Shown here: one piece after another, positions 1 through 9,850 of the stretch | Layout: every line of letters begins with the position of its first letter | Position numbering within the stretch: the stretch's first letter is position 1 | NCBI GenBank assembly: GCA_964035545.1 | Contig: CAXIUT010000049.1 | Location: forward strand, 1 to 9,850 | Length of the DNA: 9,850 bases | Direction: 5' to 3' | DNA from: Bugula neritina | Lineage: Eukaryota > Animalia > Bryozoa | Notes under the pieces: model-generated | What the model saw: the letters and a program-made list of their open reading frames with translations, nothing else | Database searches by the model: none | Told to the model about the DNA's origin: nothing | Made by a program: the position numbers and the translations under genes

Positions 1-87
1 CCCAACCCAACCCCAACCCCAACCCCCAACCCCAACCCCAACCCCAACCCCAACCCCAACCCCAACCCCAACCCCAACCCCAACCCC
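1..87 (+). repeat. Left telomere, (CCCCAA)n
   Basis: Tandem C4A2 hexamers from base 1 to 87, with a few C3/C5 units at the distal end. This is the Tetrahymena-type ciliate telomere repeat, with the C-rich strand at the 5' end as expected. Confidence 0.98.
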
Positions 88-132
88 AGAATCTTTATAT
101 AAAGGTTATTATTCAATATTTAATTAAAAACA

Positions 133-2698: not shown

Positions 2699-3658
2699 TC
2701 AGAAATCAGTTTAGTTGAAGTTAGTCATATACAATTCTTTGATAAGAACATGCGAAGGAAAATCCATCATACTTATTCCTATACATTTCTGTCCTCTATT
2801 CTATCTCAGCCACTAGAGACCAGTCCGATTGGGTCCTTTCCCTATTTTTGCAAACATGTAGGGTAGAACAGCAAAAGCTCCAGTCCAAAAGTTGATGGTA
2901 AATCTATGCAAGTCACAGTTTTTATGTAACGCATCAGCTACAATACTTTTTTTGAATTTAACGTCCCAAGGAAATAGAATAAACATGTTTTGAATGTATG
3001 CAGTGGGCAGATCCCATATGCCATAGTATCCCTCTATTTTATAAGTATCAGGAAAGAATACATCAACTCCAGCTATTATAAAAGCCTTTCCTCTCACCTC
3101 CCCAATAGTTGGTATCTTAGTTGAAAAGTAAGCATCAATATTCGCTTTAGCCATTTCCTAAAGAATGTACTTATGAGGATCATATTTACCAAATTCAAGT
3201 TGAAAAGACACAAAAACGAACTACGATGGATTCTACTTCAAAAACTGACCCAACTGCACCAACATAGGAAACAAAGGAGTCAACCTGAATGGTCCGTGGT
3301 AGATAGTCAAAGGTTCAACATCATTAACTCTGAAATCGAGATATCTCATGCCAGCTTTAAGTTGATTAGTTATGTCCCATCCTTGACATTGATTCACTAT
3401 ACAAGCTCGAGGACAGTTGTAGGTTCCAGTATTATGGGATCCAGGGATAGTTAGATTGGAAATGAGGATGTTATCATTGAGATCAGACATCCAGTTGTCA
3501 GACAAATGGTCGGGATGAGTGACCATCTGCTAGTTATAATGCTAGTGGTCCAGTTATGACTGAATAGTAGCTACTAGATGAGAGAAGTGTTCTTCTGCTC
3601 TGTAGAGGAGGTAGAAGAAGTAGACCAACAGTCCCAAAAATATGTGTTTGCACTTCAT
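2699..3658 (-). CDS. Bacterial-type phosphatidylinositol-specific phospholipase C (PI-PLC X domain) with N-terminal signal/anchor, 319 aa
   Basis: With TAR=Glu there is one ORF from ATG 3658 to TGA 2699-2701, merging ORF-track fragments 3233..3526 and 2813..3154. It has a hydrophobic N-terminus MKCKHIFLGLLVYFFYLLY and the motifs NWMS, LTIPGSHNTG (catalytic His), QL.AGMRYLDFR, IYHG (second His), FLKENPSEFV, IPTIGEVRGK and GISMMDFP. Confidence 0.92.
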
Positions 3659-3779: not shown

Positions 3780-4379
3780 ATGGACACAATATTCAATCCA
3801 GAATATGGCCACCTCTAGCAAGAATCCTAGATGGGTTTCAAGCCATTCCAACTAGATGACTATCTCCAACTATAAATACAACTCCACTAACACAGTAAAC
3901 CATAGCAAAGATCTCAAAATAAGTACAACATAAAGCAGTGCTACTCAATGATGAAAAAGCAATTATAGACAATGTTCTAATATGGAATAGATATAATAAG
4001 TGAGATAAGAATAGGACTATCTAAGAGGAAAGATAGACATTAGTATTTTACTAAAAAATATCAAATCTAGTATCAATGCTGCAATAAAAAATGGAACAAT
4101 AAATTCAAAAATATACATATCTACTATCAAATAGCCAAATAGTTTTAATAATCATCATAAAAAGATAAATAGAATAACAACTAAGACTAAGGATAAAGCT
4201 AGATATAAAATTTGGTTAACTTTCCATATGTGCTTCAATATTAATTAAAAATAACTCATGAGTTATGCAGCAAGTGCAAGAAAGGAGTATAAGGTAAAAT
4301 CGGATAATCTGATTTGATATCTTTTATCAAAAAAGTAACACATAAAATAGCTAAGTAACTTGTCAATTAAAAACAGTGA
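3780..4379 (+). CDS. Divergent, C-terminally truncated zf-3CxxC-like protein (paralog A), 199 aa
   Basis: A 600-nt ATG..TGA frame under TAR=Glu. It aligns by eye to the next two genes: KYNIKQCYSM vs SYTTKHAYSV; YQCCNKKWN vs FKC..RC..WTS; LKITHELCSKCKKGVEGKIGESDL vs FKIYGQKCRECKIWGSGSIIEPDM. It lacks the final H-x4-CEAC-x2-G-x-C motif. Confidence 0.72.
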
Positions 4380-4455
4380 TCTTATTCTCTTTATATCATT
4401 TATATTATTTATATGATTTAACTTTTTAAATATTAGAATTGATATCATACAAAAC

Positions 4456-4508
4456 TATTGATTAGATATAAAAATGAGAGGCAAATTTAACTACTTAATT
4501 GACTGTTA
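4456..4508 (+). promoter_or_regulatory. Conserved upstream block of paralog B (copy 1)
   Basis: TATTGATTAGATATAAAAATG (4456-4476) matches TATTGACTAGATATAAAAATG (5549-5569) at 20/21 positions. Both are followed by CAA.TTT.ACTACT and CTGTTA. Confidence 0.6.
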
Positions 4509-4528
4509 GCACCACTATAAATTCAAAT

Positions 4529-5452
4529 ATGGCGAAAAGAACTATCAACTTTGAACTAGATGATGACACTCCTGAGAAAAACATTCAAAAACCAAAATAC
4601 AAACCTTCATCTGAACCTAAAGATGAAAATAAAGAGTAAGATTCTTGGTTTGAATCTGAAAAAGACAAATTTTAAGATGAAAATAATGAAAAAGAAGAAT
4701 CTTGGGTTGAATATCAAGAAGAAGAGTTCAAAAATGAAAAGAAAGAGAAATACAAGATGTCCAGGTAAGATCAACTTGATCAACTAAACTACTAACTTGC
4801 TAATCCATCTCATTCAGCCAAAGGAGTCTGCAGCTATACTACCAAACATGCCTATTCAGTTATTTATGATCAATTTGACTAATTGAGAGACAAAGGCTAT
4901 GGCTTTATCACAGATTCTAATAAAAGATTATTTTTTGAGGGAAAAGATGCTCAAAACTACATTTACGAGATCAAAAGAGCCATCAAGCTTAGATTCAAAT
5001 GCAAAAACAATCGTTGCCCCTAATTTCAACGCGATGATAGCCAAAGATTATGGACTAGCTACAGGGGTGTAGTTTATTTCAGTTTTTATTTTGAGAAGAA
5101 AAGACAATAGAACTAAATGGCCTTTATGAGAATTAACTTTAAGATCTATGGACAAAAGTGCAGAGAATGTAAAATATGGGGAAGTGGGTCTATTATTGAA
5201 CCAGATATGAAAAATATGGCTAAGATATATGGTATGATTATTGAAAAGATTTTGAGTAAAGTGAAAAACCTATCAAATGGGATGGAACTAACCAATAACG
5301 AGAAAAATGGGAAAGCACCTTGGAGTAAGACTAAACTATTAGGTGGAAAATGTTTGACACACGAAGAAAGTTTATGTGAAGCTTGTGCCGAAGGAAAATG
5401 CATGTCATTCTATAAAAAGAAATATCACTATAAATAAAAAGAAACTAAATGA
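4529..5452 (+). CDS. zf-3CxxC (RTP/ZAR1-type zinc-binding domain) protein with acidic N-terminal extension (paralog B), 307 aa
   Basis: A 924-nt ATG..TGA frame. Motifs RFKCKNNRC...RLWTS, KIYGQKCREC and HEESLCEACAEGKC match the 3CxxC pattern (F-x-C..C..W-x-S; Y/F-x-Q-x-C-x2-C; H-x4-CEAC-x2-G-x-C). No transmembrane segment is visible. Confidence 0.87.
4620..4740 (+). repeat. Imperfect in-frame tandem repeat (~54-57 nt, about 2 copies) in the paralog B N-terminus
   Basis: AAGATGAAAATAA starts at 4620 and 4674, each followed by TCTTGG.TTGAAT. Peptides are DENKEEDSWFESEKDKFE and DENNEKEESWVEYQEEEFK. Confidence 0.7.
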
Positions 5453-5548
5453 TCTCCCTATTTGATTATATAATTATTCAGCTTTATCTAGAGGAAATAA
5501 AAATGTTGTTTAATTTATACTTTTAAGATTATTATTTCAAAAATATTT

Positions 5549-5604
5549 TATTGACTAGATATAAAAATGGTGTATCAATTTTACTACTAATAAAGAGGCT
5601 GTTA
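5549..5604 (+). promoter_or_regulatory. Conserved upstream block of paralog C (copy 2)
   Basis: Second copy of the block at 4456-4508, at nearly the same distance from the start codon (begins 76 nt vs 73 nt upstream). Confidence 0.6.
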
Positions 5605-5624
5605 TCTTGATATATATTAAAACA

Positions 5625-6311
5625 ATGCCAAATAAACCCAAACGATACGACCCGAAGGCTCTATAAGAAGAACTCGACTATTTGAACTAATAACTTGCTG
5701 ATCTCCCTTCATAAGCTAGAAGAGTTCACAGTTATACCTTTAAGCATGCTTATGATGTAATTCTGGATGAATTTGACTGTTTAAATGAATAGGGTTATCT
5801 TTTCGTTGCAAATAAAAACAAATACTAATTTTTGACAGGAAAAAGTGCTAATAACTATGAATTTTAGATAAAAAGATATATCAAATTAAGATTTAAATGC
5901 AAAAACAATCGATGTCCTTAGTTTCACAATACAGACAATCTAAGAAAATGGACTTCTTATCATGGTTTGGTTTGCTTTTCTTTTTACTTTTTGAAAAAAA
6001 CCAGATTAAATCCATAAAACTTCATGAGAATGAACCTAAAAATCTATGGACAGAAATGTAGACGCTGTCTAGAAGATGGAAGTGGATCTATCCTTGCCAC
6101 AGATATGAAAATACTAGCTAGAATATATGGAATAGTCATTGAAACTATCATGAATAAAGCAAAAAATCTTTCTAGAGGAATGAGACTTAACTATAAAGAG
6201 TAATATGGAGTCAGACCTTAAAACAAACGAAATAAAAGAAATTTGATTCATTAAAAAAAGTTATGTGAAGCCTGTACGAAAGGAATTTGTAGGTTTTCAA
6301 AAAGAAAATGA
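5625..6311 (+). CDS. zf-3CxxC (RTP/ZAR1-type zinc-binding domain) protein (paralog C), 228 aa
   Basis: A 687-nt ATG..TGA frame absent from the ORF track. Contains RFKCKNNRCPEF...RKWTSY, KIYGQKCRRC and HEKKLCEACTKGIC. Colinear with paralog B over essentially its whole length. Confidence 0.87.
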
Positions 6312-6417: not shown

Positions 6418-7131
6418 ATGAACTACCAAGACAACTTCTTCAAACCCTACTCAAAAAAAATAAAATAACCTCCAAAACCATACCATCACCATCATTCCCC
6501 TTATAGAAAATAATACGAAATATAAGATCTTATTTACTCTCCTTAAGCCCACCAACTGCATTAATACGATTCGAGTCCTTCCTTTAAACTAACAAAAAAT
6601 TAGCATATCGCATTTAATCGAGTATAGACCGAACCAATCTGGGAACACCTCTACAACTAGGGAATGAAATCACAAAGATAAATCGAATAAATACATCATA
6701 AACATCTAAACAAAATAGATATCTAGTGCACCTTTCAACCAGCTATTCTAAATAGCAAAAGATACCTCATGCCTAGTAGTTCAACCTTCTTGTAAAGAAA
6801 TTAAGCTTGGCAATAGCATCGTATCTAGAAAATCGTTAGAGATAAATAAGAAAAGACCAATAAAAATATCAAATAGTGTACATTTACACCCAAATTAAAC
6901 AAACCTTATCGACCTCGTCACAGTCCTTAAGATGAAAAATTGCATACATTTATATAAAGGAAATAAATAAGTTAAAAAAATAGACTAATTAATCCATACT
7001 ACTCTCCATACAAACTCAATAAAAGTAGATAGAAAAGTTCTCCCAAAAGAAAAAAAGTCAATACGGCTACATATGATATGAAAAATGTTAAAAATATGAT
7101 TAGAAAATAATTAAAAAAAATAAATATCTGA
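6418..7131 (+). CDS. Uncharacterised protein with two ECTFxP motifs, 237 aa
   Basis: A 714-nt ATG..TGA frame under TAR=Glu. Contains IWEHLYNEG, IECTFQPAI, FLERNEAWQEHR and KECTFTPKLN. This motif spacing is familiar from uncharacterised protist, putatively cytoskeletal, proteins. Confidence 0.78.
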
Positions 7132-7343: not shown

Positions 7344-9662
7344 ATGAACAAAACAACCAATCATTCAGAATACAAACCTTCAGTTGTAGGAATAGACCTA
7401 GGCTCACAGTCAACCAAAATAGCAGCAGTGTAAAAAGGAGTAGTCGACATCATAACCAACTAAGCCAACCTCAGAACCACTCCATCTGTTATAGGCTATG
7501 GAAATAAAGAAAGACTAATAGGAGAGGCAGGATATTTAAAAATGAAATCTAATTTAGCTAATACCATAGTAGCTCCTCAAAGATATCTTGGATTACAATA
7601 ATCATAATATGCCAAAGAGTAAGGTAAGTATGCACCTTGTCCACCAAAATATCAAAACAATAACATCACATTCAATATCAATCACCAAGGATAACAACAG
7701 ACAATCACACCAGAACAAGTAACTGCCAGTTTTTTAACTAAAATATAAAAAATAGTACAACTCAACAAACTCAACAACCAGTTCTAAATTATAGCTGTTC
7801 CCAACTACCTCACTTATAGCTAGAGAAAAGCCATGTTGAATTCTATATAAATAGCAAAAAGAAGTATGAAATAAAACTATGGATTTATGCTTGTAAATTA
7901 ATCTACTGCAATTGGCATGGATTATGGCTTCTATAAAATGAATTAATTTCCATAAAAATAGTAAGATGCTAAAGTTGTCCTCTTTATTGACTTTGGACAT
8001 TCTAAACTATCTATATATGCCATGAAGTTTACTAAACAGTATCAAAAAGTTATCTATCAAAAACACATCAGACAACTTGGATGCAAAAATATTGATTAAC
8101 TCATGTTGTAGTTCTATGTTGAACTCTTTGAAAATGCCAATAAGGATCTGTAAATTGGTGTCAAATAAAGCAAAAAAGCTGTTTTGAAGTTATTTTAAAG
8201 TATATAAAAACAAAGAAAAGTTCTATCAGGCAACTCAGAAGCTGACTTCAACATCGACTGCCTCTTATAAGACAACGACTTAACATATACCATGAAAAGA
8301 TAGCAGTTCTAATAAATATCACAACCAGTCTTCACCAAAATATCTACCTTCTTTGCCTAGGTCAAACAAAACCTCAAATAACTAGGAGTAGACATCAGTC
8401 ACATCGAACTCATAGGCGGAGGATCAAGAATTCCTAGCTTTATCAAAACAGTCCAAGAAGGGTTCAATATCTAACCTTCGAGAACTCTTAATTCTAGTGA
8501 ATGCATTGCCAGAGGAGCAGCTCTTTGTGCAGCTATTCATAGCAGTATATTCAGAGCAAAACAATATTTATCTTTTGATGTTAGTTCATCAACTTTGGTT
8601 TGCAGCTGGAAAGGCTAAGGATAAAACATGGAAATATAAAATAACTAAACAGTTATTCTCAGATAAAACTAAACTATTATCACATAGAAAAAGGTAGATA
8701 TCTTAATAAAACCAACCCAATCTAAAATGTTATTCGATCTCAACTAAAAAACTTAAATTCAAGGTATAAAATCTCACATCTGCTCATTTGCTATCACTTT
8801 CCCTGAACAATAATAACCAACGGAAATAAAAGTATCTTTAGTAGTAGAGTTTGATTCTAACAGAATGGTCAATAAAATAAGAGTATTCTAGCAAAGAGAT
8901 AAATAGTATTCTTTGAAGATATAGGAATTGTCTTTTGAATAGAATTTATCAAAATAAACAATAGGTAATTTGATATAGATCTAACAAACTAGTTTAACAA
9001 GAGATAACAAAATATTATAATCATACTAAAAAAGAAATCAACTAGAATCACAACTATATTCCTTCAAAGAACAACTAAATAACCTATCAACAAATAAAGA
9101 TTTTATAAATCCTTCAATTGTCGAAGAAATACTATCTTACTTCAATGATGTTGAAGATAGACTTGATGACATCGTTGAATATCAGCTAGAAATGGATAAT
9201 ATGATAAATAAAATGAAATTGGTAAATGGAGAGATTTAAAATAATAAAAATAAATATGTATAAGTTTAATAGGAATTGAAAAAGCTGAAAGGATTTATAG
9301 AGTCAGTTATCAATGGAAAAATCAAATCTATCAAGTACTATCCCGGATAGGAAGTATAAAAAGTAAAAAAATGGATCAAATCTACTCTAGAATAACTCAA
9401 AAATCAACCCAAATATCAATAACTTTGTACCTCAGTCAACCAAATCAAAAATGTTCAAGAAGATCTGATAGAAAAGATAGAAGAATGTCAAGCATAAGAA
9501 CTAAGAAAATAACAAGAAGCACAAAGACAACACTACCGACCTCAACAACAAAGATACAACAACAGTCCTTTTAACTTCAATGGTTTTGGGCAACCAAGTT
9601 ACCAAACTCCAAGAAGAAGCAGAAACACATTTAATTCTGGATTTTTCCCAGGATTTTTCTGA
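7344..9662 (+). CDS. Hsp110/SSE (HSPA4-like) Hsp70-superfamily chaperone, divergent, 772 aa
   Basis: A 2319-nt uninterrupted frame. Motifs: SVVGIDLGSQ, IITNEANLRTTPS, TPEQVTA, AVPNY, LVNESTAIGMDYG, VLFIDFGHS (the Hsp110-type D-x-GHS), IEKQRKVLSGN, FNIDCLLED, IELIGGGSRIP, SRTLNSSECIARGAAL and KRNQLESQLY. Confidence 0.93.
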
Positions 9663-9718
9663 TATGCATATATTATACTTTTTAATCATATCTCATTGAT
9701 ATTTAACTATAATAACAA

Positions 9719-9850
9719 GGGGTTGGGGTTGGGGTTGGGGTTGGGGTTGGGGTTGGGGTTGGGGTTGGGGTTGGGGTTGGGGTTGGGGTTGGGGTTGGGG
9801 TTGGGGTTGGGGGGGTTGGGGTTGGGGTTGGGGTTGGGGTTGGGGTTGGG
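9719..9850 (+). repeat. Right telomere, (GGGGTT)n
   Basis: Tandem G4T2 hexamers to the end of the window, the reverse complement of the left repeat. Both ends are therefore capped. Confidence 0.98.

What the first reader, a model, noticed from the sequence alone, without database searches (positions are those of the whole stretch)
3780..6311. Tandem array of three diverging RTP/ZAR1-type 3CxxC zinc-finger genes in a ciliate: candidate RNA-binding or defence locus
Seen in sequence: three adjacent same-strand paralogs, almost invisible in the standard-code ORF track. B and C carry the full F-x-C..C..WTS / YGQKCxxC / H-x4-CEAC-x2-G-x-C signature. All three share an additional N-terminal region (LD.L..EL; Y..K..Y; ..G) that I do not recognise from any named domain. 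They are clearly diverged from each other and have no C-terminal transmembrane anchor. Established knowledge: zf-3CxxC (Pfam PF13695) is characterised in animal RTP1-4 and ZAR1. RTP4 is an interferon-induced antiviral RNA-binding effector and ZAR1 binds maternal mRNA. Inference: a locally expanded, diversified set of soluble 3CxxC proteins in a ciliate could be an undescribed RNA-surveillance, antiviral or translational-control module. I know of no functional description in ciliates, but I cannot check this here.
Basis: partly seen in the sequence, partly recalled or inferred. Interest (0 to 1): 0.78.

Follow-up and report, generated by a model that had tools for sequence, protein, structure and literature searches.

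The report
Ciliate tandem 3CxxC zinc-ribbon genes
Three neighbouring genes on a tiny chromosome of a ciliate living with a moss animal belong to one small, so far undescribed ciliate branch of the ZAR1/RTP4-type zinc-binding (probably RNA-binding) protein family. They look like conserved, ordinary cellular genes, not a fast-evolving defence locus.

Summary
The window is a complete 9.85-kb ciliate macronuclear chromosome with C4A2 telomeres. It reads TAA/TAG as Glu and sits in a mostly bryozoan assembly.

- **Genes B and C.** B (4529-5452) and C (5625-6311) are sister paralogs, 54% identical. Both pass Pfam PF13695 Zn_ribbon_3CxxC (38.5 and 38.4 bits, cut-off 23) and keep 7 Cys + 1 His. They have a basic domain (pI about 9.3) and no membrane anchor.
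- **Gene A.** A (3780-4379) fails Pfam but is a real, highly diverged paralog. It has orthologs in two other ciliate contigs and matches family profiles (E 4e-4; hhalign E 1.8e-5). It has lost the last zinc knuckle.
- **Conserved order.** The order A-type, B-type, unknown gene, Hsp110 is kept in three ciliates.
- **Selection.** Nonsynonymous divergence is far below saturated synonymous divergence, which indicates purifying selection.
- **Relatives.** Only about 22 unnamed fragments were found among 1.84 billion representative proteins. No paper on 3CxxC in ciliates was found.
- **Structure.** The shared roughly 75-residue N-terminal extension has no recognisable family or fold.

RNA binding is inferred from ZAR1 and RTP4 only. 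The defence reading has no support. This scan had noted host (bryozoan) 3CxxC genes on other contigs, but not this ciliate family.

The parts
3780..4379 (+). Gene A, 199 aa: a zinc-poor 'A-type' paralog. It keeps the N-terminal family region and the middle CxxC, has an adjacent CC in place of the first Cys pair, and lacks the His and the last three Cys.
   Evidence: ORF with TGA as the only stop. Orthologs L014_2 (E 2.6e-11) and L021_A (E 2e-7). Family profile E 4e-4; hhalign E 1.8e-5. No PF13695 match at E<=10.
4458..4476 (+). 19-nt motif TTGATTAGATATAAAAATG, 71 nt upstream of the start codon of B; probable core promoter kept since the duplication.
   Evidence: Occurs only twice in the window, at matching distances before B and C. 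The promoter role is inferred.
4529..5452 (+). Gene B, 307 aa: an acidic low-complexity N-terminus (about 80 aa, net charge -10) followed by the extended basic 3CxxC domain (net +13, pI 9.2).
4991..5395 (+). PF13695 Zn_ribbon_3CxxC match in B (model positions 5-100 of 100).
   Evidence: 38.5 bits, cut-off 23, E 2.1e-7, read through 1 TAG and 2 TAA.
5551..5569 (+). Second copy of the 19-nt motif (TTGACTAGATATAAAAATG), 74 nt upstream of the start codon of C.
5625..6311 (+). Gene C, 228 aa: the same extended basic 3CxxC domain (net +14, pI 9.35) without the long acidic N-terminus. It is the sister of B.
   Evidence: B+C clade supported at 95/97.
5886..6284 (+). PF13695 Zn_ribbon_3CxxC match in C (model positions 4-100 of 100).
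   Evidence: 38.4 bits, cut-off 23, E 2.3e-7.
6418..7131 (+). Conserved gene of unknown function with a repeated C-T-F-x-P motif. It is a syntenic neighbour and not a family member.
   Evidence: 37-40% identity to the ORF in the same position in L014 and L021. No match to the family profile.
7344..9662 (+). Hsp110/Hsp70-family gene, the syntenic anchor of the block.
   Evidence: PF00012 on stop-free pieces. 56-57% identity over about 780 aa to L014 and L021.

Best explanation
A, B and C are members of a small, ciliate-restricted subfamily of the eukaryotic Zn_ribbon_3CxxC (PF13695) family. The host is probably a peritrich and uses the UAR = Glu code.

B and C are soluble proteins. Their basic domain consists of a family-specific N-terminal alpha/beta extension of about 75 residues fused to the zinc ribbon. 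The ribbon has eight conserved ligand positions: Cx4C, CxxC, and H-x4-CxxC-x3-C. B and C arose by a lineage-specific tandem duplication that also copied a 19-nt upstream motif.

A represents an older, conserved sister type. It has lost the last zinc knuckle and the basic charge, and it evolves about twice as fast as the B-type.

The most likely mechanism, which is inferred and not shown, is that B and C bind RNA through the zinc-ribbon domain, as ZAR1 and RTP4 do, and act in ordinary cytoplasmic mRNA handling (storage or translational control). A would be a non-canonical partner or regulator.

Confidence breaks down as follows: about 0.9 that this is a conserved ciliate 3CxxC subfamily with A as a degenerate paralog, and about 0.45 for RNA binding. 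The figure given is for the whole statement.
For: - **Domain.** PF13695 scores above the cut-off for B and C, for the stop-free piece and for relative P0002 (29.4 bits).
- **Ligands.** The ligand positions are conserved in 10 or more relatives.
- **Gene A.** A is linked to the family.
- **Synteny.** A-type / B-type / unknown gene / Hsp110 occur in the same order in L014 and L021.
- **Duplication.** B and C are sisters at 95/97 support and share the upstream motif.
- **Selection.** B vs C gives dN 0.37 and dS about 1.9. For L014 vs L021, dN is 0.24 (B-type), 0.53 (A-type), 0.21 (unknown gene) and 0.10 (Hsp110), with dS at least 1.57.
- **Charge and anchor.** The B/C domain has pI 9.2-9.35, the A-type 6.7-6.95, and there is no membrane segment.
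- **Fold.** An AlphaFold model of relative P0008 places the N-terminal extension in the same globule with high confidence (pLDDT 92-94 for residues 41-60).
- **RNA-binding precedent.** ZAR1 (PMC12799850) and RTP4 (PMC10470548) bind RNA through this domain.
- **Weak structural match.** The human ZAR1 RNA-binding domain 9jko_B aligns over 84 of its 98 residues (Z 3.9, rmsd 4.5 A).
Against: - No RNA-binding, zinc-content or expression data exist for any member.
- The structural match to ZAR1 is within noise (rank 10, tied with START-like folds). Foldseek found nothing.
- The family profile does not hit ZAR1 among PDB sequences.
- The models are of fragmentary relatives, not of B or C themselves, and are of middling confidence (pLDDT 72.7 and 77.8).
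- Synonymous sites are saturated, so site-specific positive selection cannot be excluded.
- The organism is assigned to the peritrichs by its genetic code only.
Confidence: 0.5

Rival explanations
1. An RTP4-like innate defence or RNA-surveillance module: tandemly diversifying soluble 3CxxC proteins that recognise foreign (viral or endosymbiont) RNA.
For: RTP4 uses the same domain to bind viral RNA (PMC10470548). The family shows repeated tandem duplications: B/C here, L023_1/L023_2 as sisters at 88/90, and two copies each on L013 and L017. Branches are uneven after duplication (C 0.91 vs B 0.56), and the loop before the last knuckle varies in length and sequence.
Against: The block is syntenic in three ciliates whose Hsp110 proteins are only 57% identical. 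Average dN is well below dS. Only 2-3 copies are present, and no further copy was found in the ciliate contigs of this assembly. The neighbours are housekeeping genes. No PADLOC match was found, although that library covers prokaryotes.
Confidence: 0.1
2. A protein-binding zinc-ribbon adaptor or co-chaperone (like RTP1/2 escorting receptors), with no nucleic-acid role.
For: RTP1-3 act on membrane receptors, not RNA (background stated in PMC10470548). The gene pair is kept next to an Hsp110 gene in three species. The A-type is neutral in charge.
Against: There is no membrane anchor. The strongly basic B/C domain fits nucleic acid better. Adjacency to Hsp110 is shared by the whole block, including an unrelated gene, so it does not point to a functional link.
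Confidence: 0.2
3. A nuclear DNA-binding or genome-rearrangement factor specific to ciliate biology (for example acting at conjugation).
For: The domain is basic and zinc-binding, and the subfamily is restricted to ciliate-like contigs that read TAA/TAG as sense.
Against: No known member of PF13695 is a DNA-binding factor in the papers read. No nuclear localisation or expression data exist, and no match to DNA-binding families was found.
Confidence: 0.1
4. Gene A is a decaying pseudogene, or an unrelated ORF, and not a functional family member.
For: Pairwise similarity to B and C is marginal. A gets no Pfam hit. The first Cys pair is collapsed to CC, the C-terminal knuckle is gone, and the protein ends about 12-25 residues before its orthologs. 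24 of its 28 Glu codons are TAA/TAG, unlike B.
Against: A 199-codon frame free of TGA is kept. Orthologous ORFs of similar length sit in the same position in L014 and L021. For that ortholog pair, dN of 0.53 lies below saturated dS. Profile links to the family are significant.
Confidence: 0.1

Closest known systems
ZAR1 / ZAR1L (animal oocyte mRNA-storage proteins)
   Same: The PF13695 domain sits at the extreme C-terminus of a soluble protein. B also has a low-complexity N-terminal region. In ZAR1 the domain is the RNA-binding part (PMC12799850). A solved ZAR1 RNA-binding domain (9jko_B) aligns weakly over its whole length with the model of relative P0002.
   Different: There is no direct sequence match. 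The first knuckle is Cx4C, not CxxC. An extra conserved N-terminal alpha/beta extension of about 75 residues has no Pfam or Atlas relative. The genes are in a ciliate, arranged in tandem with a zinc-poor partner type, and orthology to ZAR1 is not shown.
RTP4 and RTP1-3 (vertebrate receptor-transporting proteins)
   Same: They share the PF13695 domain. RTP4 binds viral RNA through it, and its third zinc finger is dispensable for activity (PMC10470548). This is of interest because the A-type lacks that knuckle.
   Different: [quoted passage not shown] A, B and C have no anchor. No interferon-like regulation is known or testable here.
Uncharacterised small PF13695 proteins of rotifers and ascomycetes (nearest ESM Atlas clusters)
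   Same: They are short soluble proteins consisting mainly of the domain (96-165 aa), and are the nearest feature-space neighbours of relative P0001 (scores 0.90-0.92).
   Different: These are different lineages. Whether they have the N-terminal extension is not shown, and they also have no known function.
Host (bryozoan) ZAR1-like genes in the same assembly
   Same: They match PF13695 (39.4 and 38 bits on contig C3).
   Different: They use the standard code and have exons separated by kb-sized introns on Mb-sized contigs. They belong to the animal, not the ciliate, and the ciliate family profile barely touches them (E 0.05).

Membership tests
Pfam PF13695 Zn_ribbon_3CxxC | Profile score above the curated gathering cut-off (23 bits) | tested here: met
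   B 38.5 bits and C 38.4 bits, nearly full model length; piece 5117-5434 scores 31 bits. Gene A has no match at E<=10, so A alone does not meet it.
Pfam PF13695 Zn_ribbon_3CxxC | Three Cys pairs plus a conserved His and a final Cys as metal ligands | tested here: met
   B and C have Cx4C, CxxC and H-x4-CxxC-x3-C, conserved across relatives. The first pair has spacing 4 instead of 2. A keeps only the middle CxxC and an adjacent CC. Zinc content itself was not measured.
Pfam PF13695 Zn_ribbon_3CxxC | Fold like a solved family member (human ZAR1 RNA-binding domain, 9JKO) | tested here: inconclusive
   The model of relative P0002 (pLDDT 72.7) against 9jko_B gives Z 3.9, rmsd 4.5 A and 84 of 98 residues aligned. 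This is rank 10 and tied with unrelated folds. Foldseek gave nothing at E<=0.001. B and C themselves could not be folded whole.
RTP1-4 (receptor-transporting proteins) | N-terminal 3CxxC domain followed by a C-terminal transmembrane anchor | tested here: not met
   The domain is C-terminal. The maximum 19-residue hydropathy is 0.54-1.28 and there is no hydrophobic tail.
RTP1-4 (receptor-transporting proteins) | Infection- or interferon-induced expression and antiviral activity (RTP4) | not testable with these tools
   No expression or infection data are available for this ciliate.
ZAR1/ZAR1L | Disordered N-terminal region followed by the 3CxxC domain at the extreme C-terminus | tested here: inconclusive
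   B has an acidic low-complexity N-terminus of about 80 aa (net -10) and the domain ends 15 residues before the stop. C has only 14 residues before the family region.
ZAR1/ZAR1L | Detectable direct sequence relationship or orthology to ZAR1 | tested here: not met
   The family profile against PDB sequences gives no ZAR1 hit at E<=10. The big profile search returned only ciliate-like fragments. The relationship runs only through the Pfam model.
ZAR1/ZAR1L | RNA binding by the zinc domain | not testable with these tools
   Inferred from PMC12799850 and from the basic charge of the domain only.
Known defence-system proteins (PADLOC-DB) | Profile match to a defence family | tested here: not met
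   0 families at E<=1 for the B piece, P0002, P0008 and two L014 pieces. The library is prokaryotic, so this is a weak test.

The most novel reading that the evidence does not exclude
The conserved adjacent pair, a basic zinc-complete B-type next to a neutral A-type that has lost the last zinc knuckle, forms a two-component RNA-regulatory module peculiar to peritrich-like ciliates. The degenerate partner would tune or cap the RNA-binding partner, for example during mRNA storage at life-stage switches (stalked cell to swarmer, cyst, conjugation). The family-specific N-terminal extension would be a new fold used for pairing.
Probability: 0.1. Interest if true: 0.55.

Novelty: new member of a known kind. 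Interest (0 to 1): 0.3.

Why it matters
The 3CxxC zinc ribbon has been studied only in animal proteins: ZAR1 in oocyte mRNA storage and RTP4 in antiviral RNA binding. A conserved, soluble, multi-copy branch in ciliates shows that the domain serves cellular functions far outside animals. It also offers a simple unicellular setting, with a natural zinc-poor paralog as a built-in comparison, for asking what the domain recognises.

In practice, these genes are invisible to annotation pipelines that use the wrong genetic code. Every public relative found is a truncated, unnamed fragment.

The result also removes a tempting over-reading, since nothing here marks the locus as a defence island.

Tried and rejected
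- **Cold-shock domain hint.** A 14.8-bit match in B (K-G-Y-G-F-I) was rejected because the motif is not conserved in C or any relative.
- **B+C profile for A.** The profile failed to find A. Only profiles with more relatives succeeded.
- **Word-based protein search.** It gave one hit, P0001.
- **Big profile search, long hits.** The three long hits (P0021, P0023, P0026) are spurious. Pfam shows P0021 and P0023 to be bacterial multihaem cytochromes c caught through CxxC(H). P0026 (614 aa, four short stretches, E 8e-4) has the same pattern but was not scanned.
- **PDB sequence searches.** Searches with the B piece, the family profile and two host ZAR1-like exons did not reach ZAR1. So I could not map the RNA-binding Arg of human ZAR1 (R397, PMC12799850) onto B or C. 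The profile's TIM9 hit (E 0.0012) covers only the long helix and is taken as chance.
- **Fold searches.** Foldseek and VIA-align on two models gave no clear fold.
- **N-terminal extension.** The Atlas and Pfam gave nothing usable for it.
- **Family tree.** The first 18-row tree was unresolved because of the long A-type branches. A 12-row tree without them was used instead.
- **Metagenome scan.** It was repeated with closer sequences.
- **dN/dS.** It cannot be computed properly because synonymous sites are saturated in all ortholog pairs.
- **Further paralogs.** None were found in the assembly's ciliate contigs.
Full report
**What the window is**

Both ends carry C4A2/G4T2 telomere repeats, so the 9,850 bases are a complete macronuclear chromosome of a ciliate. 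It is contig C58 of a 216-Mb assembly. The Mb-sized contigs of that assembly carry intron-split, standard-code genes, that is, the animal host. Earlier notes of this scan call the host a bryozoan, probably Bugula neritina. Hundreds of small contigs carry the same telomere repeat.

TGA is the only stop. TAA and TAG face Glu in 54 of about 130 aligned positions, against 5 for Gln. Invariant kinesin and Hsp70-family motifs require Glu at those codons. Assigning the organism to the peritrichs rests on the code alone.

**Gene content**

Read with that code, the chromosome carries:
- a kinesin (minus strand, 133 to about 2100);
- a weak PI-PLC-X-like gene (minus strand, 2699 to about 3655);
- gene A (3780-4379);
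- gene B (4529-5452);
- gene C (5625-6311);
- a conserved gene of unknown function (6418-7131);
- an Hsp110-type gene (7344-9662).

In the standard-code ORF list only one 106-aa piece of B is visible.

**The domain call**

Searching the assembly in six frames with read-through of stops, PF13695 (Zn_ribbon_3CxxC) matches B at 38.5 bits (4991-5395, model positions 5-100 of 100). It matches C at 38.4 bits (5886-6284, positions 4-100). The curated cut-off is 23 bits. The largest stop-free piece of B (5117-5434) alone gives 31 bits.

B and C are 54% identical. They share eight ligand positions, spaced Cx4C, CxxC and H-x4-CxxC-x3-C. That is enough for two tetrahedral zinc sites, but zinc content was not measured.

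The other PF13695 matches in the assembly lie on Mb-sized host contigs and have no in-frame stops. They are the animal's own ZAR1-like genes.

**Is A a paralog?**

Pairwise, A resembles B and C only marginally (z 2.2-2.7), and a B+C profile does not find it. Relatives from other ciliates settle the question.

- A contig from a JGI metagenome (L014) starts with the same telomere. It carries, in order, a divergent family member (L014_1), an ortholog of A (L014_2; 28% identity, E 2.6e-11), an ortholog of B/C (L014_3; 46%), an ortholog of the unknown gene (37%) and the Hsp110 gene (57%).
- A also hits L014_1 (E 6.6e-9), and L014_1 hits B at E 2.5e-21.
- A profile of eight members built without A finds the A frame at E 4e-4. 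That alignment is collinear across the N-terminal region, the first knuckle and the second knuckle. The next best of about 350 ORFs scores E 0.3.
- With a third A-type sequence (L021_A), profile-profile comparison of A-type against B-type gives E 1.8e-5.

So A is a genuine but very diverged paralog. All three A-type proteins keep the middle CxxC. The first pair drifts (CxxC, CxC, and CC in the window's A). The His-CxxC-C knuckle is replaced by a short Cys-free tail, which the window's A lacks altogether.

**The family**

The costly profile search over 1.84 billion representatives returned only about 22 true relatives. All are short, unnamed fragments from Logan, ENA or JGI assemblies, as expected for genes cut by mis-read TAA/TAG. 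The three long hits are spurious; the two scanned (P0021, P0023) are bacterial cytochromes c. No named protein of a model ciliate appeared.

Several contigs carry tandem copies: L013 has two, L014 three, L017 two and L023 two. A second metagenome contig (L021) repeats the order A-type, B-type, unknown gene, Hsp110.

In a 12-row tree B and C are sisters (95/97), as are L023_1 and L023_2 (88/90). Tandem duplication has therefore recurred, and the B/C duplication is specific to this lineage. It also copied a 19-nt upstream motif, found 71 and 74 nt before the two start codons.

In the ciliate contigs of this assembly no further copy was found.

**Selection**

Synonymous sites are saturated between all species pairs, so formal dN/dS is out of reach. 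The direction is still clear.
- B against C: dN 0.37, dS about 1.9.
- L014 against L021: dN is 0.10 for Hsp110, 0.21 for the unknown gene, 0.24 for the B-type and 0.53 for the A-type. Synonymous divergence is at least 1.57.

Both types are under purifying selection on average. The A-type evolves about twice as fast as the B-type. Site-specific positive selection cannot be excluded.

**Architecture and fold**

All members share about 75 conserved residues ahead of the Pfam domain. B adds an acidic low-complexity N-terminus of about 80 residues. The family domain of B and C is strongly basic (net +13 and +14, pI 9.2-9.35), while the A-type is neutral (pI 6.7-6.95). None has a membrane segment.

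Full-length A, B and C contain reassigned stop codons, and the tools take no such protein by reference. I therefore searched stop-free pieces and folded two database relatives with family alignments.

- **P0002** (complete zinc domain) gave pLDDT 72.7.
- **P0008** (N-terminal extension plus two knuckles) gave pLDDT 77.8. It places the extension (helix, strand, helix) in one globule with the beta-sheet and the long helix, at pLDDT 92-94.

Foldseek found nothing in the PDB. The wide structural search listed the solved RNA-binding domain of human ZAR1 (9jko_B) at Z 3.9, rmsd 4.5 A, with 84 of its 98 residues aligned. That is rank 10, tied with unrelated START-like folds, so it is consistent with the domain call but not evidence on its own. 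The extension has no Pfam, Atlas or structural relative.

**Function**

What is shown is a conserved, soluble, basic, Cys/His-rich domain of a family whose two studied animal branches bind RNA through it. ZAR1 loses mRNA binding when the domain is mutated or removed (PMC12799850). RTP4 binds viral RNA depending on the zinc-finger domain, and its third finger is dispensable (PMC10470548).

What is inferred is that B and C bind RNA and act in ordinary mRNA handling, with A as a zinc-poor partner or regulator.

The defence reading has only the RTP4 analogy and the recurrent duplications in its favour. Several observations weigh against it:
- deep synteny with housekeeping neighbours;
- purifying selection;
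- the small copy number;
- the absence of any defence-family match (a weak test because that library is prokaryotic).

**Comparison and novelty**

B and C are members of PF13695 by the family's own test. They are not RTPs, because the domain is C-terminal and there is no membrane anchor. Orthology to ZAR1 is not shown. The architecture is nearest to ZAR1, with the domain at the extreme C-terminus of a soluble protein and, in B, a low-complexity N-terminus.

The new points are:
- the ciliate-restricted subfamily;
- its N-terminal extension of unknown fold;
- the Cx4C first knuckle;
- the conserved zinc-poor A-type next door.

No paper in the searchable library mentions this domain in ciliates. 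This is a new member of a known kind and of modest interest. The locus is real and correctly read, but it is an uncharacterised lineage-specific branch of a known domain family, not a new kind of system.

Noticed in passing
window 1-90 and 9700-9850: C4A2/G4T2 telomere repeats lie at both ends, so the window is a complete 9.85-kb, seven-gene macronuclear chromosome of a ciliate inside a mostly bryozoan assembly. In the related contig L014 the telomere lies elsewhere, directly before an extra family member, so chromosome breakage sites differ between species.
   Followed up: partly
window 6418-7131 (+): A conserved gene of unknown function contains a repeated C-T-F-x-P-(K/A)-(I/L) motif. It is 37-40% identical to the ORF in the same position in L014 (3017-3790) and L021 (1792-2559). 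One 56-aa stop-free piece of its L014 ortholog gave no Pfam hit; the window gene has no stop-free piece long enough to scan.
   Followed up: partly
window 4458-4476 and 5551-5569 (+): A 19-nt motif, TTGAYTAGATATAAAAATG, lies 71 and 74 nt upstream of the start codons of B and C. It has been kept although the coding sequences have diverged to 54% protein identity, so it is a candidate core promoter or regulatory element. It was not found upstream of A, the unknown gene or Hsp110, nor in L013, L014, L016 or L017.
   Followed up: partly
window 3780-6311: Glu codon choice differs sharply between the paralogs. A writes 24 of 28 Glu as TAA/TAG, C writes 12 of 21, and B only 9 of 39. This may reflect expression level or the age of the sequence.
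   Followed up: no
window 4377-4420: Just after A's TGA stop, the same frame reads S-Y-S-L-Y-I-I-Y. This faintly recalls the S-L-(L)-N-F-F-Y tail that ends the A-type orthologs in L014 and L021. A may have been shortened by a recent stop, but the resemblance is too short to judge.
   Followed up: no
window 2699-3655 (-): This gene gives only a weak PI-PLC X-domain match (18.5 bits, below the cut-off of 23.1) on one stop-free piece. It may be a small PLC-like protein with a hydrophobic N-terminus.
   Followed up: no
L013 (Logan SRR25018411), 53-964 and 1125-1568: Two tandem family members lie on a 1.57-kb contig of another ciliate with 43% G+C and few in-frame TAA/TAG. The second copy runs off the contig end and groups with P0002, not with its neighbour, which points to an older duplication.
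   Followed up: partly
G000 contig C3, 20363627-20364613 and 28373572-28375653: Host (animal) PF13695 genes are split by kb-sized introns and have no in-frame stops. They are separate from the ciliate family, and earlier notes of this scan describe them as bryozoan ZAR1-like genes.
   Followed up: no
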